Source of the DNA: Octopus bimaculoides
Lineage: Eukaryota
DNA: 64,000 nucleotides
Direction of reading: 5' to 3'
Assembly (NCBI RefSeq): GCF_001194135.2
Contig: NC_068985.1
Coordinates: forward strand, 19,233,215-19,297,214
The translations under genes and the position numbers were made by a program. The notes under the pieces were generated by a model. The model made no database searches, was not told the DNA's origin, and worked only from the letters and a program-made list of their open reading frames with translations. Of the stretch, positions 171-63,289 are shown one piece after another. Position 1 is the first letter of the stretch, and each line of letters begins with the position of its first letter.

Positions 171-467
171 ACAAACTTGTTACCAGTTCAAATATGCTTA
201 AGGCGTATTCGAACTCGTAAGTTTTTTTGTATTCACTCTATTTTGTCATGGAGAAAAATTTCTCGCTATAGACAAATAGGTGTGAATACCACGAGTCAGC
301 TCACAGCAGCACCTAACCGGACTGTGGGATGCATGCATTTCGGAGAGGTTATCTCCGCTTCAACGAATTTACTTCTATTTGTTTACCGCGAGAAATTTTC
401 TCCACAACAAACGCAACTTATAGGTTGGAATATGCCTGAAGCATATTTGGACTGGTAACAAGTTTGT
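171..467. mobile_element. MITE-like element with 29-bp terminal inverted repeats
   Basis: acaaacttgttaccagttcaaatatgctt (171-199) is the reverse complement of 439-467 with 1 mismatch; a second internal IR at 250-266/388-403. Confidence 0.7.
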
Positions 468-3586: not shown

Positions 3587-4952
3587 GCCTAAAAACAACA
3601 CTGATGGAGATTGAAAAAAGCCTGCAACAATCCTATGTGAGGAAAAGAGCAGACAAAGAAACCTGGGTTATAAAAAAAACATTTCGTCAAACCCAAAGGC
3701 CTTCTTTCACTACGCGAAAGAAACAGCATCAGTACGCTGCAAGATAGAACCCCTCTTCCAAAAGGATGGCTCCCTCACAGATAGTCCAACCAGGATCAGT
3801 GAGGTACTAAATGACCAGTTCAAAAGTGTCTTTACCACCCCGTTGGAACACAGACAAGTGAATGAACCAGTGGACTTCATTGCCGCCTCACCTATAACCA
3901 GCGAGGCAGTTACGATGGAATACATCAACATTAGCGAAGAAGATGTACTACTAGCCATAGATGAGGTGGCCGCAAACTCAACTGCTGATCCTGATGGTTT
4001 CCCAGAAATCCTCCTCAAAACCCCTCCAGATTCTCTTCCCCCGTAAAAGGGGAAGCAGAGCAGATGCCAAAAACTATAGGCCTATCTCTCTGACTTCACA
4101 CATCAGCAAAGTCATGGAACGGATAGTCAGAGTGAAACTAATCGCATTCCTTGAAGAAAATAACTTGATAAGTGATACACAGCATGGCTTTCGACCAGGT
4201 AGGAGCTGCCTGACCCAGCTCTTACAACATTATGACTGAGTGTTGAGGCAGTTACTCAACAACTCAAATGTGGACGTAATATGCTTTGATTTTGTAAAAG
4301 CTTTTGACAAAGTGGATCATGGTATGATATGCCACAAACTGCGTGATCTCGGCATAGCTGGAAAACTTGGAGAGTGGTGACATGACTTTCTGAAAGATAG
4401 AAGTCAGGCAGTAGTGGCCAATGGAATCACCTCAATGAAAACACAAATAGTGAGCAGTGTTCCACAGAGCACTGTCTTGGAACCACTGCTTTTCATAGTG
4501 GCCTCCTCAGATATGGCCTCAACAGCCCGGATAGCCACCCTTGCTAGCTACGCAGACGATACGAAAGTCTTGCAGAAAATACAAAACCCCAGCGATGTTG
4601 CTTATCTGCAGCAGGAGTTGCACTCAATTTACAGATGGGCTGAGGATAGTAATATGCAGTTTAATGCTGAAAAATTCCAAGCCCTGCACTACCAGCGTCC
4701 AAAACTGAATATGAAACTTACGGGGTCCACTGGTCCACAGGGAATTACAATCCCAGAGCCTAAATCAGCGAGGAACCTGGGTATCGACATGAGTGATGAT
4801 ACCTCTTTCCAAGCGCACATCACCAGGATGGTGACAAAGTCCAGACGATTGGTTGGGTGGATCCTGAGAACATACAGAACCAGAGGTAAAGAAACCATGA
4901 TGGTCCTCTGGAGGACATTCATCCTCAGTCACCTGGATTACTGCTCCCAGCT
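3587..4952 (+). pseudogene. CR1/L2/Jockey-group LINE reverse transcriptase fragment (frameshifted, stops)
   Basis: NYRPISLTSHISKVMERIVR, QHGFRPGRSCLTQLL, FDFVKAFDKVDH, VPQSTVLEPLLF, YADDTK and LDYCSQL motifs across ORFs 3843-4046, 3961-4239, 4414-4965. Confidence 0.92.
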
Positions 4953-5023
4953 GTATTATATATGATATATATACATATATATATTACATATATATAATAT
5001 ATAATATACATGCATACATACAT

Positions 5024-5106
<83 letters not shown>

Positions 5107-5350
5107 NNNNNNNNNNNNNNNNNNNNNNNNNNNNNNNNNNNNNNNNNNNNNNNNNNNNNNNNNNNNNNNNNNNNNNNNNNNNNNNNNNNNNNNNNNNNNN
5201 NNNNNNNNNNNNNNNNNNNNNNNNNNNNNNNNNNNNNNNNNNNNNNNNNNNNNNNNNNNNNNNNNNNNNNNNNNNNNNNNNNNNNNNNNNNNNNNNNNNN
5301 NNNNNNNNNNNNNNNNNNNNNNNNNTATATATATATATATATATATGTAA
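4953..5350. repeat. (TA)n/(TACA)n/(CA)n microsatellites around an assembly gap
   Basis: Visible repeats and N run. Confidence 0.9.
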
Positions 5351-7792: not shown

Positions 7793-7832
7793 TACATACA
7801 CACACACATATACATACGTGCGCGCGCGCGCG

Positions 7833-8040
7833 CGCCGGGTGAAATGCTTAGCGGTATTTCGTCTGCCGTTACGTTCTGAGTTCAAATTCCGCCGAGGTCG
7901 ACTTTATCTTTCATCTTTTCGGGATCGATAAATTAAGTACCAGTTACGCACTGAGGTCGATGCAATCGACTTAATCCCTTTGTCTATCCTTGTTTGTCCC
8001 CTCTATGTTTAGCCCCTTGTGGGCTATAAAGAAATAAGAA
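7833..8040 (+). mobile_element. SINE family A
   Basis: gaaatgcttagcggtatttcg..gagttcaaattccgccgaggtcgac..aagtaccag. Confidence 0.9.
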
Positions 8041-8536
8041 ATCACCCGATTTCGACTCGAAAAATTGATCCAACCAAGCTCTCAATTCTGCATCAGAACG
8101 AAACTCCGCGCATAGCATTTGAAAGAGATCGAAATATGCGGAAATCCATTGGTGCCAAATCAGGAGAGTACGGCGGGTGTGGTAACACTTCTCAGCCATG
8201 CATTTGAATGGCTTCCTTGGTCATATTAGTGATATGAGGGCGGGCGTTGTCGTGCAGCAGAAGAACTCCATGCTGTCAATTAGGTCTTTTCGCTTGAATA
8301 ACCATGTTGAGTCGTTCCATCTGTTGAACATAGAGTTCTGCGTTGACCATTTGGTTCCGTTCAAGCAATTCGTAATGGATAATCTCTTCCCAGTCCCACC
8401 ATACGCATAACCTCGTTTTACGCGGATTAAGATCTTGTTTCACTCGCAGTGTCGCTTGTTTATCGGGGCTAAGTCATTCCTTACGCTGCTTCATATTGAT
8501 GTACTGGCACCATTTTTCGTCGTCAGTAACGATTCG
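8041..8536 (-). pseudogene. Mariner (DD34D) transposase fragment
   Basis: Minus strand RIVTDDEKW..LCVWWDW..LLHDNARPH..HPPYSPDLAPMDF with in-frame stops; cut off by a gap. Confidence 0.93.
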
Positions 8537-9251
8537 NNNNNNNNNNNNNNNNNNNNNNNNNNNNNNNNNNNNNNNNNNNNNNNNNNNNNNNNNNNNNNNN
8601 NNNNNNNNNNNNNNNNNNNNNNNNNNNNNNNNNNNNNNNNNNNNNNNNNNNNNNNNNNNNNNNNNNNNNNNNNNNNNNNNNNNNNNNNNNNNNNNNNNNN
8701 NNNNNNNNNNNNNNNNNNNNNNNNNNNNNNNNNNNNNNNNNNNNNNNNNNNNNNNNNNNNNNNNNNNNNNNNNNNNNNNNNNNNNNNNNNNNNNNNNNNN
8801 NNNNNNNNNNNNNNNNNNNNNNNNNNNNNNNNNNNNNNNNNNNNNNNNNNNNNNNNNNNNNNNNNNNNNNNNNNNNNNNNNNNNNNNNNNNNNNNNNNNN
8901 NNNNNNNNNNNNNNNNNNNNNNNNNNNNNNNNNNNNNNNNNNNNNNNNNNNNNNNNNNNNNNNNNNNNNNNNNNNNNNNNNNNNNNNNNNNNNNNNNNNN
9001 NNNNNNNNNNNNNNNNNNNNNNNNNNNNNNNNNNNNNNNNNNNNNNNNNNNNNNNNNNNNNNNNNNNNNNNNNNNNNNNNNNNNNNNNNNNNNNNNNNNN
9101 NNNNNNNNNNNNNNNNNNNNNNNNNNNNNNNNNNNNNNNNNNNNNNNNNNNNNNNNNNNNNNGTTTCGCACCTATAGAGTTCTTAGCGGTGTAGGTACGC
9201 AACCTCTCCCGATGGTCACTCTCTGACCGGCCATAATCATCAACCTATTAA

Positions 9252-10989: not shown

Positions 10990-12270
10990 TATTAATTTGT
11001 GTATGTAAGAGTAGTGTCTAGACCAGAAAATATTCCTACAGAGATGATTGTGATACTAGACAACTTTGGAATTGATAAAATTACAAACCCGTTCAATGAC
11101 ATGGACGAAACAGGAGATTCCAGAAGAAATGTCCAAATTAATCTTTGTTGCACTCCCCTTCCAAAACCTGGAGCAATAGAATGTGAGCTACACAGAGCTA
11201 CCAGACGTATGAGTCATATTACAAAAATATAGTTGTGAGCCATAATACTCAGATCCAGAAATAGAATCAGGCTTGAGATATCAAAGTCATAACGTGAATT
11301 TGTTGAGGGGAAAAAGAACAGCTAATTCTGTGTACATTCTGAGATACACCATTGACAGAGCAATTAAAGTACAATAAGACCTGTACCAATGTTTCATTGA
11401 TTATACAAAAAGCGTTTGAGACAGTAAACTTTGAAGAAATTAAAATGTTGAAAATATGAATTTACAGGGTGTCCAAAAAGTCTGGGTACATGGAGTAAAG
11501 AAAATCATAATATAAACAATTAAATATAAGAATTAATAATTTATTAAAGTATGTGTTAATCCCCATGTAGGTACATGAAGTAAATAAAATCATGACATAA
11601 ACAATTAAATATAAGAAATAATAATTTCTTAAAGTATGTGTTAATCCCTTGTACCCAAACTTTGTGGACACCCTGTAGATGGAAAGAACTTACGAATAAT
11701 AAAGAGTGTAGAATTGGCGAAGAAAGACAACAAAAAAAAAAACACAGCAGTAATCAGAAATAAAAATGAAGGGCAGTCTGAGAAAAATCAAGAAAGGAGT
11801 ACAAAAGAGGTGTGCTTTATAATGGTATACGGTGTAATCAAAGACACTGTCAGTAAGACTGAGAAAACGAATACTATTACTTATGCTTGTGGGACCTGAA
11901 ATATTAAAGAAATACAAAAACTTTTCAACGCTGCAGAGATGATGTTTGTTAGAAAGAATACTAAAAGTATAATAGGCAGATAAAGTGACAAATATCGAGA
12001 TCCTAAGACAAAAAAAAAAAAAATCTGTTAGACAGCTTCTCATCAACACAAGGAGACAACAAACGCAATTCATTCAACAATATTTGAGAAGAAAAAAAAA
12101 AACCTTAAGTATTTGGTGAAAACTATGAATCTGAAAGGAAGAAGCCAGAGGAAAGACAATCGATGGTTTTGCCAGCTTGCATCAGAAATACTTACTTGCC
12201 CAATAATGCGTTAAGTTGTGGGAAGGGAAGACATGAAGATCCATGGTCATCGGAGTCTGTAGGCATGACA
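10990..12270 (+). pseudogene. RTE-clade LINE RT fragment interrupted by a MITE
   Basis: PLPKPGAIECELHR..MSHITKI, CFIDY.K.F.., then after the insertion DGKNLRII..TAVIR..IKKGV, and YAC.TW..AAEM..W.DKVTN.EIL..GRS.GRQ-like segments. Confidence 0.75.
11465..11675. mobile_element. Tc1/mariner-type MITE with TA target duplication
   Basis: TA|cagggtgtccaaaaagtctgggtaca ... tgtacccaaactttgtggacaccctg|TA. Confidence 0.85.
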
Positions 12271-15165: not shown

Positions 15166-16115
15166 ATATGTATATATATATATACATATATATATAGTTT
15201 TAGGGAAAATAACCAATTTTCAAGAACTCATCGATGAAAATCCACTAATTGGTTATTTTCCCTAAAACTATATATTTTATATATACTTTATCTATAAGGC
15301 TCAATTTAATTTTAATTTTTTATAAATTGATTTTAATTGAGTTTTTTNNNNNNNNNNNNNNNNNNNNNNNNNNNNNNNNNNNNNNNNNNNNNNNNNNNNN
15401 NNNNNNNNNNNNNNNNNNNNNNNNNNNNNNNNNNNNNNNNNNNNNNNNNNNNNNNNNNNNNNNNNNNNNNNNNNNNNNNNNNNNNNNNNNNNNNNNNNNN
15501 NNNNNNNNNNNNNNNNNNNNNNNNNNNNNNNNNNNNNNNNNNNNNNNNNNNNNNNNNNNNNNNNNNNNNNNNNNNNNNNNNNNNNNNNNNNNNNNNNNNN
15601 NNNNNNNNNNNNNNNNNNNNNNNNNNNNNNNNNNNNNNNNNNNNNNNNNNNNNNNNNNNNNNNNNNNNNNNNNNNNNNNNNNNNNNNNNNNNNNNNNNNN
15701 NNNNNNNNNNNNNNNNNNNNNNNNNNNNNNNNNNNNNNNNNNNNNNNNNNNNNNNNNNNNNNNNNNNNNNNNNNNNNNNNNNNNNNNNNNNNNNNNNNNN
15801 NNNNNNNNNNNNNNNNNNNNNNNNNNNNNNNNNNNNNNNNNNNNNNNNNNNNNNNNNNNNNNNNNNNNNNNNNNNNNNNNNNNNNNNNNNNNNNNNNNNN
15901 NNNNNNNNNNNNNNNNNNNNNNNNNNNNNNNNNNNNNNNNNNNNNNNNNNNNNNNNNNNNNNNNNNNNNNNNNNNNNNNNNNNNNNNNNNNNNNNNNNNN
16001 NNNNNNNNNNNNNNNNNNCTATTATTTATAGCTTTATCTACTTCGAGTTTCACCGTTAAAAACAATTTATTTCATTTACTTATTTATTCAAAAATTTATC
16101 TCAAAAAACAATATT

Positions 16116-22554: not shown

Positions 22555-22757
22555 TTTAGAAAAGGGCCAGCAATGTTTAGGAGTGGAATATGTTGATTAC
22601 ATCGACTTCAGTGTTCAACTGGTACTTATTTTATTGACCCCGAAAGAATGAAAGGAAAAGTCGACTTCGGCATAATTTGAACTCAGAACATAAAGACGTT
22701 CGAAATTCCGCTAAGCATTTTGTCCGACACGCTAACGAATCTGCCAGCTGCCGCCAT
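22555..22757 (-). mobile_element. SINE family A
   Basis: Reverse complement of the family A core. Confidence 0.85.
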
Positions 22758-25249: not shown

Positions 25250-25640
25250 GGGAGTGGTATGATAGTAGCAGGATGTTAACTGGTCAAGTGCCCTGAAAGT
25301 GACTTGTTGTGGATGGTAGTAGCGATTGAATTTTTGGTGTATCTCTTTTGAATGTATTGTTTTTAATATTTGTGTGGGTGTTATTCTAAGCAGCAGTAGT
25401 AGTAAAGGAAGGAGGTGGCGGAGAGGAAGAAGAAGACGAAGAAGGAGAAGAAGAGAAAGAATAATAAAAGAATGCCGGAGTCGTATGATAGTAGTAGGGT
25501 GTTAAATGGTCAAGTGACCTAAAAGTGGCTCGTTGTGGATTATAGTAGTGATGGGACTATTTTTAACGAATTCTTGGGTATCTCTTTTGAGTGAATCATT
25601 TTTAATATTTGTGTGTGTGCTATTCTAAGGCCGTGGTGGA
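25250..25640 (-). repeat. Two degenerate ~150-bp direct repeats downstream of the Penelope endonuclease (pLTR-like)
   Basis: ggagtggtatgatagtagcaggatgttaactggtcaagtg..tattctaag (25250-25390) vs ggagtcgtatgatagtagtagggtgttaaatggtcaagtg..tattctaag (25477-25630). Confidence 0.65.
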
Positions 25641-25990
25641 TATGTCATTTGTTGTAGATGTGTTCAAAAGGGGTCTGTATTTTATGATAAAGAACGACTC
25701 TACTAATTCGTTGGCTACAGGTTGTATCGTCCCTGAATTGATAGAGAGGAACAATTCTGAAACTTGGATTTTTGTTATTGGCGCAAATGTCGATGTATTG
25801 GCTGAATGCTGTTCTTCTGTTTTTCGGGATTTTGATCTGGGATCTGTGCAGAGACATCCTTTGACGTAGACTGTTTTTGTTTGGCTTATGTATTGCTTTT
25901 GACACCCAGAGCAGGTTAGTGCGTATATCAGGTTCCCCGAAGCACGTGTGAAGCTTCTTTTCATTGTGAAACGTTGTCCCTGCTTGAAGG
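25620..25990 (-). pseudogene. Penelope-like GIY-YIG endonuclease fragment
   Basis: FKQGQRFTMKRSFTRASGNLIYALTCSGCQKQYISQT, frameshift, SLRQRMSLHRSQI..FFIIKYRPLLN. Confidence 0.85.
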
Positions 25991-26890
25991 GCCTTTCAAG
26001 CCTCATTCATAACACCGCGGAATCCTTCCTTCCACTCTGACTTTCAATGTTGTCTCTCCTACTGTGATAGTCTCGACCATTTTTTCTATATTTTCTTCCG
26101 CAACTTGCACCACCATATCAAGGGTTTGTCCCTGCCAGTTCCTATGGGGTGTTCTGGTGGCCTGGAGGACCACTACCCTCTCCTCCATGCCTAGCAGTAT
26201 GGCAGCCACCAACCAGGCTACATCCACTTCTGGGGGTATTTCCTCCACCCTAACCCTGGAAGCACATCTCCTAGGGTATACGGGTAGAAGAACCACTTCA
26301 TCCGTTTTTAGCGGTGTTGCTGAGTTCAGCCTGGCGGTAGCTACCTTTCTGAACTGCACCTCCACCGTTCCAAACTTTTGTCCTCTGGCAAGGTAGGAAA
26401 TTTCTTGCCAGATTGGTCTCAGTGTCTTTTCTATTTGAACCGTTGACATGATTTCGATTTTCCTGGCTGTCTCTGAGTATGTTCGGTAAATTATTGTTCT
26501 TTCTGTTGCTTCCTTTTAAACGTTTTTTGGTGGGGACACCTTCGCTTCGTTCCCCTCCCTTTTAAGCATTCCCTTGAACTTGCTCTCATCCTCCAGCCTC
26601 ACATCTTCGCTTTTTTCTTTTGTCGCTGCAGCATAATTCCTTGCTTCCATTGCTTCGTCTATCTTCTTTATACGCCTCACCATTTTTTCCTCAGACGACA
26701 CAAAGTCCGAAGAAGGGCAGTTTACAACGTCTGAAACAGAACAATTCAAACTTTCGTAATTCCTCACTCGACGCCCCTCCATTAAACAAGAGGAAAAACG
26801 TCGGACCGCCAAGACAGTAAAAAAAAAAACAAAAACAAAAAAAACACCTGTGTAACAAACAAAACCAACAATCCAACTGACAAACGCTAT
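25991..26890 (-). pseudogene. L1/Tx1-like LINE 5' UTR and ORF1 (truncated at the zinc knuckle)
   Basis: ORFs 26516-26812 and 26003-26449 join by a frameshift; ends VRVEGRIPRCYE*GLKG, a CCHC knuckle start with a Cys-to-stop change. Confidence 0.65.
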
Positions 26891-27317: not shown

Positions 27318-27497
27318 TTTCACTCAAGGAACAAGACCCAACATTTTGAGGAGTGGGGGCTAGTCCATTAGATTGACCCCAGCACGCAACTGATATTTAA
27401 TTTATCGATCCCGAAAGGATGAAAGGCAAAGTCGACCTCGGCGGAATTTGAACTCAGAGCGTAAAGGCAGACGAAATACCGCTAAGCATTTTGCCTG
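27318..27497 (-). mobile_element. SINE family A (tandem with the previous copy)
   Basis: cccgaaaggatgaaaggcaaagtcgacctcggcggaatttgaactcag. Confidence 0.9.
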
Positions 27498-27504
27498 ACG
27501 ACAC

Positions 27505-35244: not shown

Positions 35245-35455
35245 TCAAATTTTGGCACAAGGCCAGCAATTTCTGGGAAAGGGTGTAAGTCAAATACAGC
35301 GACCTCAGTACTCAACTGGTACTTATTTTAACGACTCTGAAGGCGATGAAAGGCAAAGTGGACCTCGGTGAAATTTGAACTCTGAACATAAAGACGGACG
35401 AAATGGCGCTAAGCATTTTGATCGGCGTGCTAACGATTCTGCCTGTTCGCCGACT
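35245..35455 (-). mobile_element. SINE family A
   Basis: Reverse-complement core. Confidence 0.85.
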
Positions 35456-37523: not shown

Positions 37524-37723
37524 AGGTGGCAGAATCGTCAGCAAGCCGGGCGAAATGCTTAGCAGTTTTTCGCCTACCGTTACGTTCTGAGTTCAAATTC
37601 CGCCGAGGTCGACTTTGCCTTTCATCTTTTCGGGATCGATAAGTACCAGTGAAAGACTGGGGTCAATGTGATCGACTAATCCTCCCCTCCCAAATTCCAG
37701 GTTTTGTGCCTTCAGTAGAAAGG

Positions 37724-37770: not shown

Positions 37771-38696
37771 CATCTTCTTTCAATTCTATTTCCATTTCTT
37801 ACCGAGTGCCTTCCTGACACCTAGGGCAGAGAAACTTACCGTATACTTTGGTAGGCCATTAAAATAAACACACCAGATTGTTCATTTACAAAGTCATGTG
37901 ATATAGAAAAAGCGGAAGACAGAGAGAAGAAAGAAAAAAATGTTTAAAGTAACATAAAATAAAGGGGGAAAAAGAAAAGAAAATTCACAGCGACACTGCT
38001 CTTCTAAATACGTGTGAGGTACCTTTTAAGACAATCTTTTGCGCTTCCTGCATGGATGGTAAACCATGGATCATACTTAAATAATTTTCAGTTCCTTTTT
38101 TCATCATTCCAAGTGCTCCTACATTTACTGATATTGTAACCGTCTTGAGATGCCACATCTTTTCGATTTCGATTAGCAAATCTTTATATTTTCTGAGCTT
38201 ATCAAATTCTTTTGCCAAGATATTATGGTCACAGGGTATGCTCATGTCAATCAAGAAACAGACTTTATTGTTTTGGTCTTTTACAACAATATCTGGTTTA
38301 TTTGCTTTGATGGTCCGTTCTGTACATACTAGGAAGTCCCAAAATAGTTACATTTTCTTCCTCAGTTACAGCCTCAGGGTGGTGCTTGTACCATTTGTCA
38401 GCAGTTTTGTTTTCATAATGCCGACACATTATCCAATGTAGATATTGGCCAACTCTGTCATGTCTTGATTTATAACCTACAGGTGCTAAAACCTTACATC
38501 CAGAGATTAGGTGGTTCACTGTTTCTATCCCATTGTTGCAGTATCGGCACTTTGGGTCTACACCATGCTTCATCACATTGGCTTGATAGTTCCGGGTCAA
38601 TAAGCTCTGATCTTGAGCAGCCAAGATAAAACCTCCACTCTCTGCCTTTAGCCACGAGCTCCGTAGCCACTGATGGGTCTACATCAGCTTGTTTGT
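37771..38696 (-). pseudogene. Dong/R4 retrotransposon 3' fragment: CCHC knuckle, REL endonuclease, 3' UTR
   Basis: AAQDQSLLTRNY..CRYC..ETVNHLISGC..RHDRV; KPDIVVKD..LIDMSIP..KYKDL..VGALG. Confidence 0.9.
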
Positions 38697-44402: not shown

Positions 44403-44609
44403 TTTTCTACTCTAGGCACAAGGCCCGAAATTTTGGGGGAGGTGGCCAGTCGATTAGATCGACTCCAGTGCGCAACTGGTATTTAAGTTATCGATCCCGA
44501 AAGGATGAAAGTCGACCTCGGCGGAATTTGAACGCAGAACGTAAATACAGACGAAATACCGCTAAGCATTTTGTCCGGCGTGCTAACGTCTCTGCCAGCT
44601 CGCCGCCTT
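44403..44609 (-). mobile_element. SINE family A, well conserved
   Basis: cccgaaaggatgaaagtcgacctcggcggaatttgaac..gccagctcgccgcc. Confidence 0.92.
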
Positions 44610-54651: not shown

Positions 54652-55186
54652 CACACACATGCACACACACATGCACATTTGTGGAGTAAAATACGGAGTC
54701 ATAGAATCATGTGTCTATCATGGAAAGCTCCTCTAGCGGACTCGGCTAGCAGACCGCATAGTAATCCAATACGGAAGAATATAATGCAAGATTTTATGCA
54801 GCTGAAAACCAGGAGATCCGACCTATGGAAATTATTTCATGAGAAGTAAATGAACTATAAAAGGTGTGAAAGATGAATATATTTATTTAAACACCGGTCA
54901 TCTTGTGTTTAAATATATTCACCCTTCACACCTCCTGGTTTGTTTGTTTATATATATATATATATATNNNNNNNNNNNNNNNNNNNNNNNNNNNNNNNNN
55001 NNNNNNNNNNNNNNNNNNNNNNNNNNNNNNNNNNNNNNNNNNNNNNNNNNNNNNNNNNNNNNNNNNNNNNNNNNNNNNNNNNNNNNNNNNNNNNNNNNNN
55101 NNNNNNNNNNNNNNNNNNNNNNNNNNNNNNNNNNNNNNNNNNNNNNNNNNNNNNNNNNNNNNNNNNNNNNNNNNNNNNNNNNNNNN

Positions 55187-58038: not shown

Positions 58039-58339
58039 TGCTCTCAAACCAGCTGCAATCATCATAATCAATGAACCCTCCGCCAGACTCAACAATTAAA
58101 TAAAAAAAAAAAGATTAGTCGAGCACTTTTTAAAGAACTAAATCTTGATTAAAACGAAATAGATAAAAAAAAAAAGAAGAAAATGAAAAATGAAGTTGAA
58201 AATGAAATGAAATAGTACTCAATTATATCTTAGCCTGTAATCTTGTGGAAAGCAGACAAAACAGAGAAAAGTAAAGCCTAAGTTGAAAACAATTTTTTTC
58301 TAAATTCCTTTTTGTTGTTGAGAATCGCAACTGTTTGAG
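58039..58339 (+). repeat. Left arm of ~300-bp inverted repeat
   Basis: Reverse complement of 59454-59761, high identity with a few indels. Confidence 0.95.
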
Positions 58340-58752
58340 TGGATAGAAATTCATCCAAACCTTCCGCACAGAAGCTTCCATGGACTATATCCAGTTACCT
58401 ACATTGTATTCTCTTCCTGACAAATATACGTTTTGTCTGACTCAACGTAGTTATAAATAGAAATAGTGGAAGATAATGTTCGTCGTTATAGAGATACTAA
58501 TGACGTGTTCTGCGTTTACTTGCGGTTCTGAGCTCAAAACCTCCCACAAATATAGAATGGCGATATTTATAGAATGTAATTAAAGTGAAAGCAAGGGGAG
58601 AAATTAGTGTAATTCATTTGGTGTGAATATTGCTTGACAGCTGATTGAAGACTATTCAAACAATCACAACTAGTAACACACACACACACACACAGTAAAT
58701 TGATTTGCGTAAAAAGGTCAACAAGAAGAGCACTCCATCTAATGAGAGTTCA

Positions 58753-58889
58753 ATATTAATGGATGTGTTTCACTCCACATGCATTACACGCGCTACTAAT
58801 AGTTTCACGCTGATGAACGTACTTGTCATGCACGTGAAACTATTAGTAGCGCGTGTAATGCATGTGGAGTGAAACACATCCATTAATAT
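58753..58889. repeat. Perfect 57-bp inverted repeat with 23-nt loop
   Basis: 58753-58809 is the exact reverse complement of 58833-58889. Confidence 0.97.
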
Positions 58890-59147
58890 ATATATATATA
58901 TATATATAATTATGTGTATTTCTTCTATCTTAATGAATAAAAATTCTTCTGATAGAATAAATGGGTTAATAGAAACCAATGTAGCAAAGAACACAAAATA
59001 ACTGTGGTTAGCTCATGCTTTCCCTGATGAGAAGGTTACAATTTTAATATCAAAGATCCCTATGGATCACACAGGTTGTAATCCTTTGAAACATATGTAG
59101 GAATAAAGTATGCAATTTCAACATGCGTTTTCTCCAATCCTTAAATT

Positions 59148-59182
<35 letters not shown>

Positions 59183-59453
59183 CAACTGCACACCAAACAC
59201 TAACCTTCTTCATGAAGATTGAGACTGCCGTTTTCCCTTCTCCATTTCTTATTACAATTGCTACATTAAACAAAATCTTATCACTTAACAATGTTAGACA
59301 ATATGATAACCAACGCGTGGAAACTAAACAGCAGTTTTAAATCTCTCTTCTCAGTAACGTAGAATTTCAATGTGCTAATCATTCTAATGCATTAATCATA
59401 CGAATACATTGTTGAATATATCGATGAAAATCACAAAATTGCGAAGCTAAAAT

Positions 59454-59761
59454 CTCAAACTGTTGCGATTCTGAACAACAAAAAGGAATTTAGAAAAAAA
59501 TTGTTTTCAACTTAGGCTTTACTTTTCTCTGTTTTGTCTGCTTTTCACATTAGATTTCTTAACACAAGATTACAGATTAAAATATAATTGAGTACTATTT
59601 TATTTCATTTTCAACTTAAGATTTCTTTTTTTTTTTATCTATTTCGTTTTAATCAAGATTTTGTTCTTTAAAAAGTGCTCGACTAATCTTTTTTATATAT
59701 TTAATTGTTGAATCTGGCGGAGGGGTCATTGACTACGATGATTGCAGCTGGTTTGAGAGCA
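59454..59761 (-). repeat. Right arm of ~300-bp inverted repeat
   Basis: Reverse complement of 58039-58339. Confidence 0.95.
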
Positions 59762-62300: not shown

Positions 62301-62400
62301 GAATCGCGTTATGTTCTCACAACGCGTCCTACATATGAATAGGATTATATCAAAAGAGCTTATTCCCTTAGAAGATCTTTTCCTTTTCATCGGCAGATCG

Positions 62401-62674
62401 AGAAATTAATTTTTTGTAACTAAACACTTTCAAACTTTGGACACTGGTAGAATGGGTTATACACCGCCGGAAGTTGTTGTTGACAAGCAACAGCAGTAAT
62501 TTTATTCAGCTGAATACACGTCATTGATTGGTTGAAATTACCGAAATACGACAAATTTAACACGAAATAACTTCGTAAATAGAAACTTTTCTCAAAAACG
62601 CTAAGAGTAAAAGATGTTTTATATGACACATTCGACCAGTGTCCGAAAGTGTTTAGTTACAAAATATAATTTCT
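62401..62674. mobile_element. MITE-like element with ~40-bp imperfect TIRs
   Basis: ttttgtaactaaacactttc..ggacactgg vs ccagtgtccgaaagtgtttagttacaaaa. Confidence 0.7.
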
Positions 62675-63289
62675 TGATCTGCCGATGAAAAGGAAAAGAT
62701 CCAAGAATCGTAGTCGTTGTCGTTGTCACCGCCGTCGTCGTCGTTGTCATGTTTCGCACGTTTTTTACAGTGCGGCGATGACTACAATGAAAGCTTTCCC
62801 GATTAAGCACGAGTTCTCCCATAGGAAGAAATCGTAACGTTACTTCGTTCTGACTACCTCACCGTATTTTTGTGGCAGAGATATATGAGGGTGGTTTGCC
62901 ATTGCCTTCCCCAACTGGTTGACCGTTGGCCCACAGGGAGCTCATCCGTTCATCGGGAGGACTTTTTTTTAGTCCTGCACAGTATCCAGGCATCCTCCTT
63001 ACCTACTACTCGTACCATATAAGCCAATACTACATGATCGAGTGGTTGGTGACTAAACCGGCTCTTCCACTTGAATAACTCTGAAGAGTGTTTGATGAAT
63101 AATTTATTTTCAAAAATGCTCATCTTAAATACCATAGACGTGGTTTGCAAATGGCTATCGATTGCAGTTTGCACTTGTATCGGCCACAATCCAAGAAGTC
63201 TATTCTATCATCTGAGCCCTAAATGTTTAAGGTTTAGCTAAACACTTCGCGGAAGTATTCAACGCTAACAAGTCAATGAGGGAGCCCAT

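What the first reader, a model, noticed from the sequence alone, without database searches (positions are those of the whole stretch)
58039..59761. 1.7-kb foldback locus: ~300-bp inverted arms around a central perfect hairpin
58039-58339 and 59454-59761 are reverse complements over their full length, with scattered substitutions and a few indels, including a 17-nt indel between gtg microhomologies. They are 1.1 kb apart, with a perfect 57-bp hairpin near the middle. If transcribed, the RNA would form a long duplex plus an inner hairpin. Long duplexes are established ADAR and Dicer substrates, and coleoids edit RNA extensively, so this could be a hyper-editing site or hairpin-RNA/endo-siRNA source. 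It could instead be a foldback or composite transposon; I see no TSD at the outer ends.
Basis: partly seen in the sequence, partly recalled or inferred. Interest (0 to 1): 0.7.

Follow-up and report, generated by a model that had tools for sequence, protein, structure and literature searches.

The report
Transposon-derived inverted repeat with inner hairpin
The 1.7-kb foldback is real, but it looks like two decayed copies of a small non-coding mobile element lying head-to-head, with a separate small palindrome between them; this kind of locus is common in repeat-rich genomes and nothing here shows it has a function.

Summary
Arms 58039-58339 and 59454-59761 are inverted copies: 274/318 aligned positions identical, 17 substitutions, indels of 1, 9 and 17 nt, 1114 nt apart. 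A perfect 57-bp-stem hairpin (58753-58889) lies in the spacer.

New points:
- Homology stops abruptly at all four arm ends.
- Every arm end carries the same 16/17-nt motif (CTCAAAC[C]WGYTGCRAT), found nowhere else in the window. Each arm is therefore a discrete ~300-bp unit with its own short terminal inverted repeats, like a MITE.
- The locus has no coding capacity and no Rfam family above threshold.
- The arm differences look neutral.
- No target-site duplication fits any boundary model.
- No other copy could be found in the window or in any searchable collection, so genome copy number is untested.

Best reading: a transposon-derived inverted pair plus an independent, younger palindromic mini-element.

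If transcribed, it would form a ~300-bp duplex with helices up to 76 bp, a plausible ADAR substrate. Such loci are reported as abundant in octopus. Endo-siRNA production is disfavoured, because molluscs are reported to lack that pathway. The organism was not verified.

Interest is low.

The parts
58039..58339 (.). Left arm, 301 nt: one copy of a ~300-bp AT-rich (29% GC) non-coding unit
   Evidence: Inverted match to 59454-59761, 86% with gaps, E=4e-112. Homology ends abruptly on both sides. GC.
59454..59761 (.). Right arm, 308 nt: the inverted second copy of the same unit
58043..58059 (+). Outer terminal motif of the left arm, CTCAAACCAGCTGCAAT. It is preceded by TGCT, which both outer ends share.
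   Evidence: Pattern CTCAAACN{0,1}WGYTGCRAT: 4 hits in the window against 0.01 expected, all at arm ends.
58324..58339 (-). Inner terminal motif of the left arm, CTCAAACAGTTGCGAT (read on the - strand), ending exactly at the arm boundary
   Evidence: Anchored inverted-end test against 4000 random ~300-bp segments: P=0.0013.
59454..59469 (+). Inner terminal motif of the right arm, CTCAAACTGTTGCGAT, starting exactly at the arm boundary
   Evidence: Anchored test P=0.012.
59741..59757 (-). Outer terminal motif of the right arm, CTCAAACCAGCTGCAAT (read on the - strand), followed by AGCA
58340..59453 (.). 1114-nt spacer: unique, non-coding, with no internal symmetry apart from the palindrome. It holds (AC)n at 58676-58694, (AT)n at 58886-58908 and (TA)n at 59150-59182.
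   Evidence: Single-copy in the window by nhmmer. No Pfam family. Microsatellites. No residual inverted similarity next to the arms.
58753..58889 (.). 137-nt palindrome: perfect 57-bp stem (58753-58809 / 58833-58889) and 23-nt loop. It is flanked by TA / TTAA and abuts (TA)n. GC is 39% and CpG is not depleted.
   Evidence: MFE -105.9 kcal/mol, z=-21.3. Unique in the window. Rfam hits only below gathering scores. Composition.
59550..59566 (.). 17 nt present only in the right arm, between CACA direct repeats (59546-59549 and 59563-59566). This is the signature of a microhomology-mediated deletion in the left arm, or a slippage event.
   Evidence: Alignments; sequence.
58176..58184 (.). 9 nt (GAAGAAAAT) present only in the left arm, inside an A-rich low-complexity stretch

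Best explanation
The locus is transposon-derived inverted-repeat DNA, not a dedicated gene. Each arm is one copy of a ~300-bp, AT-rich, non-coding element bounded by its own imperfect 16-21-nt terminal inverted repeats, which is the architecture of a MITE. The two copies lie head-to-head, 1.1 kb apart. The 137-nt perfect palindrome in the spacer is a separate and younger feature, most simply a palindromic mini-element inserted at a TA or TTAA site next to a (TA)n tract. Shown: the anatomy, the sharp boundaries, the shared end motif, the lack of coding capacity, the neutral-looking divergence and the predicted RNA fold. Inferred: that the unit is or was mobile. Also inferred: that the two copies are not independent chance insertions but arose by a local hop, by aberrant transposition, or as an old pair later homogenised by gene conversion. 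The four like-oriented ends could in principle let a matching transposase move either arm or the whole 1.7-kb block, as in a composite transposon, but nothing shows that this happened. As RNA, the locus acts only if read through by a host transcript. It would then fold into a ~300-bp imperfect duplex and be a by-product substrate for ADAR hyper-editing, not a source of siRNAs.
For: Inverted homology of 318 aligned nt, E=4e-112. It stops dead at all four boundaries: z about 0 just outside, z=15 just inside. The motif CTCAAAC[C]WGYTGCRAT sits at all four arm ends and nowhere else: 4 found, 0.01 expected. An equally good inverted match anchored within 4 nt of both ends occurs in 0.13% (left) and 1.2% (right) of random ~300-bp segments of the window. 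No Pfam domain in any frame of arms, spacer or flanks, and no protein relatives among 5.8 and 1.84 billion proteins. 17 substitutions, 8 transitions and 9 transversions, no excess of G.U-preserving changes on either strand, no clustering (P=0.13), plus three indels that would bulge a duplex. This pattern fits neutral decay and does not fit a maintained helix. A 57-bp stem as old as the arm pair would stay perfect with P=0.03, so the palindrome is probably younger. The window is transposon-rich: a mariner-type transposase fragment (PF01359, E=2.4e-16), RT fragments, 16 SINE copies and another, unrelated foldback-style element with 88-bp inverted ends at 62374-62701. TIR elements and MITEs are abundant in octopus genomes (PMC13282606).
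Against: No target-site duplication fits either arm, the whole unit or the spacer. At about 3% divergence per copy, a TSD should mostly survive, so this is the main weakness. Explaining it needs an older pair homogenised by gene conversion, a very short TSD, or a non-canonical insertion. Both outer ends share 4 extra bases (TGCT) that the inner ends lack, so the terminal repeats are asymmetric. Mobility and family membership are unproven: no third copy was found in the window, and the source genome is not in any searchable collection. The terminal-repeat statistic is good but not overwhelming, and the two arms are not independent tests. The only strong palindrome in 58 kb lies inside the only strong inverted pair, roughly a 2% coincidence, which hints that the parts may be linked.
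Confidence: 0.55

Rival explanations
1. Non-transposon inverted segmental duplication. A ~300-bp segment was copied in reverse orientation 1.1 kb away by replication template switching or fold-back repair. The shared end motif served as the short inverted microhomology that guided the switches.
For: No TSD anywhere. The copies are adjacent and inverted with no third copy in 58 kb. The end motifs contain small palindromes (CAGCTG; CAAC-N-GTTG) of the kind that promote template switching. The 17-nt indel shows that microhomology-mediated events occurred here.
Against: A duplication has no reason to start and stop exactly at an inverted 16-nt motif at both ends of the copied segment. Fold-back models predict microhomology only at the inner junction. 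The arms are markedly more AT-rich than their flanks (29% against 35-42% GC), as expected of inserted foreign units.
Confidence: 0.18
2. A single non-autonomous long-TIR (foldback-type or composite) transposon that inserted here as one 1.7-kb unit. The arms are its terminal inverted repeats, and the spacer with its hairpin is its middle domain.
For: The architecture matches foldback elements: long inverted arms and a non-coding middle domain (PMC4079207). The outer ends are identical over 25 nt including TGCT. The only perfect palindrome in the window lies in the middle domain. Foldback termini can be shared with a companion MITE.
Against: No TSD at the outer ends, whereas foldback-type elements show 7-10 bp. 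No tandem sub-repeats in the arms. The perfect hairpin implies little time since it formed, but then an insertion TSD should be intact. The inner ends carry a full terminal motif, which a simple long TIR does not need.
Confidence: 0.12
3. Two unrelated chance insertions of a high-copy repeat that happen to lie close together in opposite orientation.
For: The window is repeat-dense, and diverged inverted SINE pairs within 4 kb occur four times. Each arm has the form of a discrete element.
Against: With the same nhmmer settings, a truly high-copy repeat (the SINE) is found 16 times in 58.3 kb, while the arm is found exactly twice. Two randomly placed copies would lie within 1.4 kb and inverted only about 2.4% of the time (arithmetic figures). 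No TSDs.
Confidence: 0.1
4. A selected structured-RNA gene: a hairpin-RNA or endo-siRNA precursor, a dedicated ADAR-binding RNA, or a miRNA-like or shRNA-like precursor made from the inner hairpin.
For: Extremely stable predicted folds on both strands. The inner hairpin resembles miRNA-precursor models in shape (MIR5565 65 bits, mir-507 35 bits). The perfect stem could reflect purifying selection rather than youth.
Against: All Rfam scores are below gathering, occur on both strands, and the best is to a plant family, so the match is to a generic perfect hairpin. A 57-bp perfect stem is not the usual animal pre-miRNA geometry (established knowledge). The arm differences show no pairing-preserving bias and include bulging indels. 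Molluscs are reported to lack siRNA-class Dicer and Argonaute and to lack endo-siRNAs (PMC12479628). No transcription evidence is available.
Confidence: 0.04
5. Assembly artefact: a false inversion or a chimeric palindrome in a gap-rich short-read draft.
For: The window has 12 N-gaps. Perfect palindromes can be library or assembly chimeras, and the hairpin abuts a (TA)n tract.
Against: The arms differ by 17 substitutions and 3 indels, which an artefactual duplication would not produce. The whole unit lies inside one contig with unique sequence on both sides. The 137-nt palindrome is short enough to be spanned by single reads.
Confidence: 0.02

Closest known systems
Inverted pairs of short interspersed repeats as ADAR substrates (e.g. 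inverted Alu pairs in primates; repeat pairs in octopus, Porath et al. 2017, PMC5625713)
   Same: Two diverged copies of one short non-coding element in opposite orientation within 2 kb. The predicted duplex is long and near-perfect: three blocks per arm (40, 76 and 97 nt, 213 nt in all) meet a criterion of at least 95% over 40 nt. This is the class of locus where most hyper-editing is found.
   Different: The unit looks like a DNA-type element with terminal inverted repeats, not a retroposed SINE. Transcription and editing are untested here. Copy number is unknown.
Foldback-type transposons (Drosophila FB, Tetris, Galileo; PMC4079207, PMC3573991)
   Same: Long inverted arms around a non-coding middle domain. 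Foldback termini can be shared with a companion MITE. The structure can arise independently in several superfamilies.
   Different: No tandem sub-repeat domain in the arms. No 7-10-bp TSD. The arms are only ~300 nt, and each has a terminal motif at its inner end too. No other copies are known.
MITEs (miniature inverted-repeat transposable elements)
   Same: Each arm is ~300 bp, AT-rich and non-coding, with sharp boundaries and short imperfect terminal inverted repeats.
   Different: No TSD and no demonstrated multi-copy family. The superfamily cannot be assigned.
Composite transposons (bacterial Tn5/Tn10 type) and C. elegans Tc7 (a 921-bp element with 345-bp inverted ends mobilised by Tc1 transposase; from my own knowledge, not checked here)
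   Same: Two inverted copies of an element with functional-looking ends bracket unrelated DNA, so the outer pair of ends could be used together. This is what the locus could work like.
   Different: There is no evidence that the block ever moved: no TSD, no second copy of the block, no TA target and no Tc1-like ends.
Drosophila hairpin-RNA (hpRNA) endo-siRNA loci
   Same: A long inverted repeat able to form a several-hundred-bp intramolecular duplex.
   Different: Those depend on Dicer-2/AGO2, a pathway reported absent in molluscs (PMC12479628). Their arms derive from target genes (established knowledge). Here the arms are AT-rich with no detectable gene relationship.
Palindromic mariner-derived MITEs that double as miRNA-like hairpins (human MADE1 / mir-548; from my own knowledge)
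   Same: The inner 137-nt element is a near-perfect palindrome flanked by TA. A mariner-type transposase remnant exists in the window.
   Different: Its ends do not resemble the mariner remnant or any other sequence in the window. TA cannot be told from TTAA as the target. The stem is longer than usual pre-miRNAs, and Rfam scores are below threshold.

Membership tests
MITE (each arm) | Short (under ~800 bp) and without coding capacity | tested here: met
   Arms are 301 and 308 nt. No Pfam family in any frame. No protein relatives.
MITE (each arm) | Terminal inverted repeats at the element's own ends | tested here: met
   The motif CTCAAAC[C]WGYTGCRAT sits at all four ends and nowhere else. Anchored test P=0.0013 and 0.012. 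The repeat is imperfect, and the outer ends carry 4 extra shared bases.
MITE (each arm) | Target-site duplication flanking each copy | tested here: not met
   No direct repeat of 2-12 nt fits either arm, even with +/-6 nt of boundary slop.
MITE (each arm) | Multi-copy dispersed family in the genome | not testable with these tools
   Only the two adjacent copies exist in the window. The source genome is absent from all searchable collections.
Foldback-type transposon (whole unit) | Long terminal inverted repeats separated by a non-coding middle domain | tested here: met
   Definition from PMC4079207.
Foldback-type transposon (whole unit) | Internally repetitive arms (tandem sub-repeat domain) | tested here: not met
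   TRF finds only short A-rich low-complexity arrays in the arms.
Foldback-type transposon (whole unit) | TSD of about 7-10 bp at the outer ends | tested here: not met
   The best candidate, ACTGCTC/ATTGCTC, is asymmetric to the ends. Perfect 5-mers arise by chance in 17% of random pairs.
ADAR hyper-editing substrate (inverted-repeat dsRNA) | A reverse-oriented similar sequence within 2 kb able to form a long, strong duplex | tested here: met
   86% over 318 nt, with helices up to 76 bp. 550 nt of the locus meet a criterion of at least 95% over 40 nt, modelled on PMC5625713.
ADAR hyper-editing substrate (inverted-repeat dsRNA) | Both arms in one transcript, with clustered A-to-G mismatches in RNA-seq | not testable with these tools
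   No expression data are reachable. No exon or gene was recognised within the window.
hpRNA / endo-siRNA locus | Dicer-dependent 21-22-nt duplex reads from the arms, loaded into an siRNA-class Argonaute | not testable with these tools
   No small-RNA data are reachable. The literature reports no siRNA-class Ago or Dicer and no endo-siRNAs in 32 molluscs, including O. bimaculoides (PMC12479628). This applies only if the window is molluscan, which was not verified.
hpRNA / endo-siRNA locus | Arms derived from, and complementary to, a target gene | tested here: inconclusive
   No protein-level similarity of any arm frame to anything and no match in the window. The rest of the genome could not be searched.
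miRNA precursor (inner hairpin) | Match to a curated family at or above its gathering score, or canonical pre-miRNA geometry | tested here: not met
   MIR5565 65.3 bits (gathering 80), mir-507 34.8 (79), mir-275 20.2 (56). MIR5565 matches on both strands. No hit at gathering thresholds. The stem is 57 bp and perfect.

The most novel reading that the evidence does not exclude
The nested design, a ~300-bp imperfect duplex enclosing a perfect 57-bp hairpin, is a transcribed and selected structured-RNA locus. It could be a dedicated ADAR-recruiting or dsRNA-sensor-modulating RNA. Alternatively, the perfect inner hairpin could be an shRNA-like Dicer substrate in a lineage otherwise reported to lack endo-siRNAs. 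The perfection of the inner stem would then reflect selection rather than youth.
Probability: 0.03. Interest if true: 0.55.

Novelty: new member of a known kind. Interest (0 to 1): 0.15.

Why it matters
As it stands, very little. It is one more transposon-derived inverted repeat in a genome where such structures are reported to cover about 0.4% of sequence. Its practical value is as a clean, well-delimited example. It has sharp boundaries, a defined end motif and helices up to 76 bp. It could serve as a test locus for hyper-editing or dsRNA-sensing studies if it proves to be transcribed. It could also seed the definition of an unclassified MITE family and its 137-nt palindromic companion once the whole genome is searched.

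Tried and rejected
1. Finding other copies through spurious ORFs. Exact look-up of two ORFs spanning the hairpin and a junction found nothing on record. A 2005-aa six-frame composite of the locus against 5.8 billion proteins gave 0 hits. A 530-aa composite of arm and hairpin frames against 1.84 billion representatives with full HMMER gave 0 hits.
2. Exact-word DNA scans gave 0 hits: an arm 22-mer and a hairpin 21-mer in metagenome contigs, and a terminal 21-mer in viral contigs.
3. Identifying the organism. An RT fragment gave two unnamed ~1-kb contigs. A gag-like ORF gave seven unnamed Logan contigs at 58-66% identity from runs SRR11869385/90/91. Neither the runs nor the SINE sequence could be traced in the literature. 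The SINE at 7826-8040 resembles, from memory only, the abundant octopus SINE.
4. A larger degraded palindrome: rejected. There is no inverted similarity beyond the arm boundaries and none between the spacer halves.
5. A transposase remnant in the spacer: none found.
6. tRNA-derived SINE head or known RNA family: none found.
7. Gene-conversion tracts: mismatches are not significantly clustered (P=0.13).
8. Sharing of either end motif with other elements in the window, allowing up to 3 mismatches: none found.
10. Superfamily assignment from the terminal sequence or TSD was not possible.

Full report
**Observation**

The finding is accurate. The repeat finder and a gapped BLAST show that 58039-58339 and 59454-59761 are reverse complements over their whole length. 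They share 274 of 318 aligned positions (94% of the 291 ungapped columns), E=4e-112.
- There are 17 substitutions and three indels.
- The indels are 1 nt, 9 nt extra in the left arm (58176-58184) and 17 nt extra in the right arm (59550-59566).
- The arms are 1114 nt apart.

The inner hairpin has a perfect 57-bp stem (58753-58809 / 58833-58889) and a 23-nt partly paired loop. Its centre is 79 nt left of the unit's centre. None of this can be chance. Against dinucleotide shuffles, the hairpin folds with z=-21. The two arms joined by a linker fold with z=-43 (+ strand) and -49 (- strand).

The unit lies within one gap-free contig (55187-61249) of a draft that has 12 N-gaps. Because the arms have diverged, the large repeat is not an assembly artefact. 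The small perfect palindrome cannot be verified independently here.

Three things were not in the finding.
1. The inverted homology stops dead at all four boundaries. The 30-200 nt just outside the arms, on either side, are no more complementary than shuffled sequence (z between -1.2 and +1.5). The last 60 nt inside score z=15. The arms are therefore discrete units, not the best-preserved core of a larger fading palindrome. The two halves of the spacer are also unrelated.
2. Every arm end carries the same motif:
   - outer ends: (TGCT)CTCAAACCAGCTGCAAT
   - inner ends: CTCAAAC(A/T)GTTGCGAT, starting exactly at the boundary.
   The pattern CTCAAACN{0,1}WGYTGCRAT occurs four times in the 64-kb window, all at arm ends, against 0.01 expected. 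An equally good inverted match anchored within 4 nt of both ends is found in 0.13% (left arm) and 1.2% (right arm) of 4000 random ~300-bp segments of the window. Each arm therefore has its own short, imperfect terminal inverted repeats.
3. The arms are markedly AT-rich (28-29% GC) compared with their flanks (35-42%). The hairpin has 39% GC with no CpG depletion.

**What it is not**

- No frame of the arms, spacer or flanks matches any Pfam family or any protein in the two large collections.
- There is no tRNA.
- No Rfam family reaches its gathering score. In permissive mode the hairpin hits miRNA-precursor models below threshold: MIR5565, a plant family, at 65 bits against 80 on both strands; mir-507 at 35 against 79. 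That is what any perfect hairpin does.
- The arms contain no organised tandem sub-repeats.

**Target-site duplications**

No direct repeat of 2-12 nt fits the whole unit, either arm or the spacer, even with +/-6 nt of slop. The best candidate, ACTGCTC/ATTGCTC, is asymmetric to the ends, and perfect 5-mers arise in 17% of random pairs. The hairpin is flanked by TA and by TTAA. Because both are palindromic and it abuts a (TA)n tract, this is uninformative.

**Copies elsewhere**

In the window the arm, hairpin, spacer pieces and flanks are all single-copy by BLAST and by nhmmer at maximum sensitivity. As a positive control, the same search finds 16 copies of a SINE in the 58.3 kb of non-N sequence. 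The arm is therefore not a very-high-copy repeat. Two randomly placed copies would be this close and inverted only about 2.4% of the time.

Outside the window nothing could be found. ORF look-ups, two protein-space searches with six-frame composites and three exact-word DNA scans all returned zero. TE proteins from the window have only a handful of ~60%-identical relatives on ~1-2-kb unnamed contigs. The source genome is thus effectively absent from the collections, and genome-wide copy number remains untested.

The organism could not be verified.

**Evolutionary signature**

The arms differ at 17 of 291 sites (JC 0.061), with 8 transitions and 9 transversions. In a transcript, these would give 3 G.U and 5 A.C mismatches on one strand and the reverse on the other. 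There is no pairing-preserving bias, and three indels would bulge a duplex. The mismatches are not significantly clustered (P=0.13). This is what neutral decay looks like.

If the octopus repeat clock applies (JC 0.09 is about 25 My; PMC13282606), each arm is roughly 8 My from their common ancestor. That figure is an inference conditional on the organism. A 57-bp stem of the same age would remain perfect with P=0.03, so the palindrome is probably younger and independent.

**How it most likely arose and works**

The sharp boundaries, the end motif, the AT-rich foreign composition, the lack of coding capacity and the neutral decay point to two copies of a ~300-bp MITE-like non-autonomous DNA element lying head-to-head. 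A separate palindromic mini-element lies in between. The window shows such things are common locally:
- an unrelated ~330-bp element with 88-bp inverted ends at 62374-62701
- four diverged inverted SINE pairs
- several imperfect self-palindromes
- a mariner-type transposase fragment (PF01359, E=2.4e-16).

Adjacency without other copies suggests the two arms are not independent. They could reflect a local hop, aberrant transposition, or an old pair homogenised by gene conversion.

The missing TSDs are the main difficulty. They keep a non-transposon inverted duplication (template switching at the small palindromes inside the motif) as a serious rival. That model does not explain why the copied segment begins and ends at the same inverted motif.

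A single foldback or composite element that moved as a unit fits the gross architecture (PMC4079207). It fails on TSD and on tandem sub-repeats, and a recent insertion, implied by the perfect hairpin, should have kept its TSD.

**RNA consequences**

Either strand would fold so that 269-275 of the 301 left-arm bases pair with the right arm, with uninterrupted helices up to 71-76 bp. Porath et al. (PMC5625713) show three relevant things:
- hyper-editing is concentrated in repeats that pair with nearby inverted copies
- octopus has the strongest signal among the species they studied
- 4.4e-3 of random 50-bp octopus sites have a reverse match of more than 95% over at least 40 bp within 2 kb.

Applying a similar criterion here, the foldback supplies all 550 non-microsatellite positions that qualify, 0.94% of the window. 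At the published density, loci of this size would occur about once per 125 kb. That would be of the order of 10^4 per genome, taking a genome of about 2.7 Gb from my own knowledge. So, if transcribed, it is a plausible ADAR substrate, but an ordinary one.

The siRNA reading is disfavoured. A 32-species survey including O. bimaculoides found no siRNA-class Argonaute or Dicer and no endo-siRNA signature in molluscs, and suggested editing as the fate of long dsRNA (PMC12479628).

**Verdict**

- The locus is a new, unclassified member of a known kind of thing.
- Interest is low.
- The one reading that would change this is a transcribed, selected nested-hairpin RNA. I put it at about 3%.

Noticed in passing
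window 62374-62701: A compact ~330-bp element with 88-bp terminal inverted repeats (85% complementary, 161-nt loop). It is unrelated in sequence to the focal arms and is a second foldback-style MITE candidate in the same window.
   Followed up: partly
window 7826-8040 (+) and 15 further sites (e.g. 22566-22732, 27324-27500, 37541-37683, 44445-44583): A SINE family present 16 times in 58.3 kb. Four pairs lie in inverted orientation within 4 kb at 69-81% identity (e.g. 35254-35443 / 37528-37710) and could also form weaker dsRNA. From memory only, it resembles the abundant octopus SINE.
   Followed up: partly
window 8279-8473 (-), abutting the N-gap at 8537: A mariner-type transposase fragment (Pfam PF01359 Transposase_1, E=2.4e-16). 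The neighbouring frame at 7987-8220 (-) looks like its C-terminus by eye but has no Pfam hit and overlaps a SINE copy.
   Followed up: partly
window 3961-4962 (+) and 38301-38678 (-): Frame-shifted reverse-transcriptase fragments of non-LTR retrotransposons (RVT_1 E=3e-8 and 1e-6; zf-RVT E=1.5e-4).
   Followed up: partly
window 25623-26515 (-): A 170-aa gag-like ORF followed by a 128-aa ORF with a GIY-YIG-like motif (LIYALTCSGCQKQYISQT), suggestive of a Penelope-like element. There is no Pfam hit. Seven unnamed Logan relatives at 58-66% identity come from runs SRR11869385/90/91.
   Followed up: partly
window 171-467, 11460-11680, 15177-15285, 54862-54933: Imperfect self-palindromes (65-77% complementary, 70-320 nt), possibly old palindromic elements.
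   Followed up: no
window gaps at 5107, 6392, 13355, 24328, 54968, 61250 and others: Most of the 12 N-gaps are flanked directly by (TA)n, (CA)n or similar microsatellites, so the draft assembly breaks at simple repeats. The (TA)n tracts inside the foldback did not break it.
   Followed up: no
window 58753-58889 within 58340-59453: The only near-perfect palindrome in the window lies inside the spacer of the only strong inverted pair. By uniform placement this is roughly a 2% coincidence, judged post hoc. It remains unexplained and could mean the parts are linked.
   Followed up: partly
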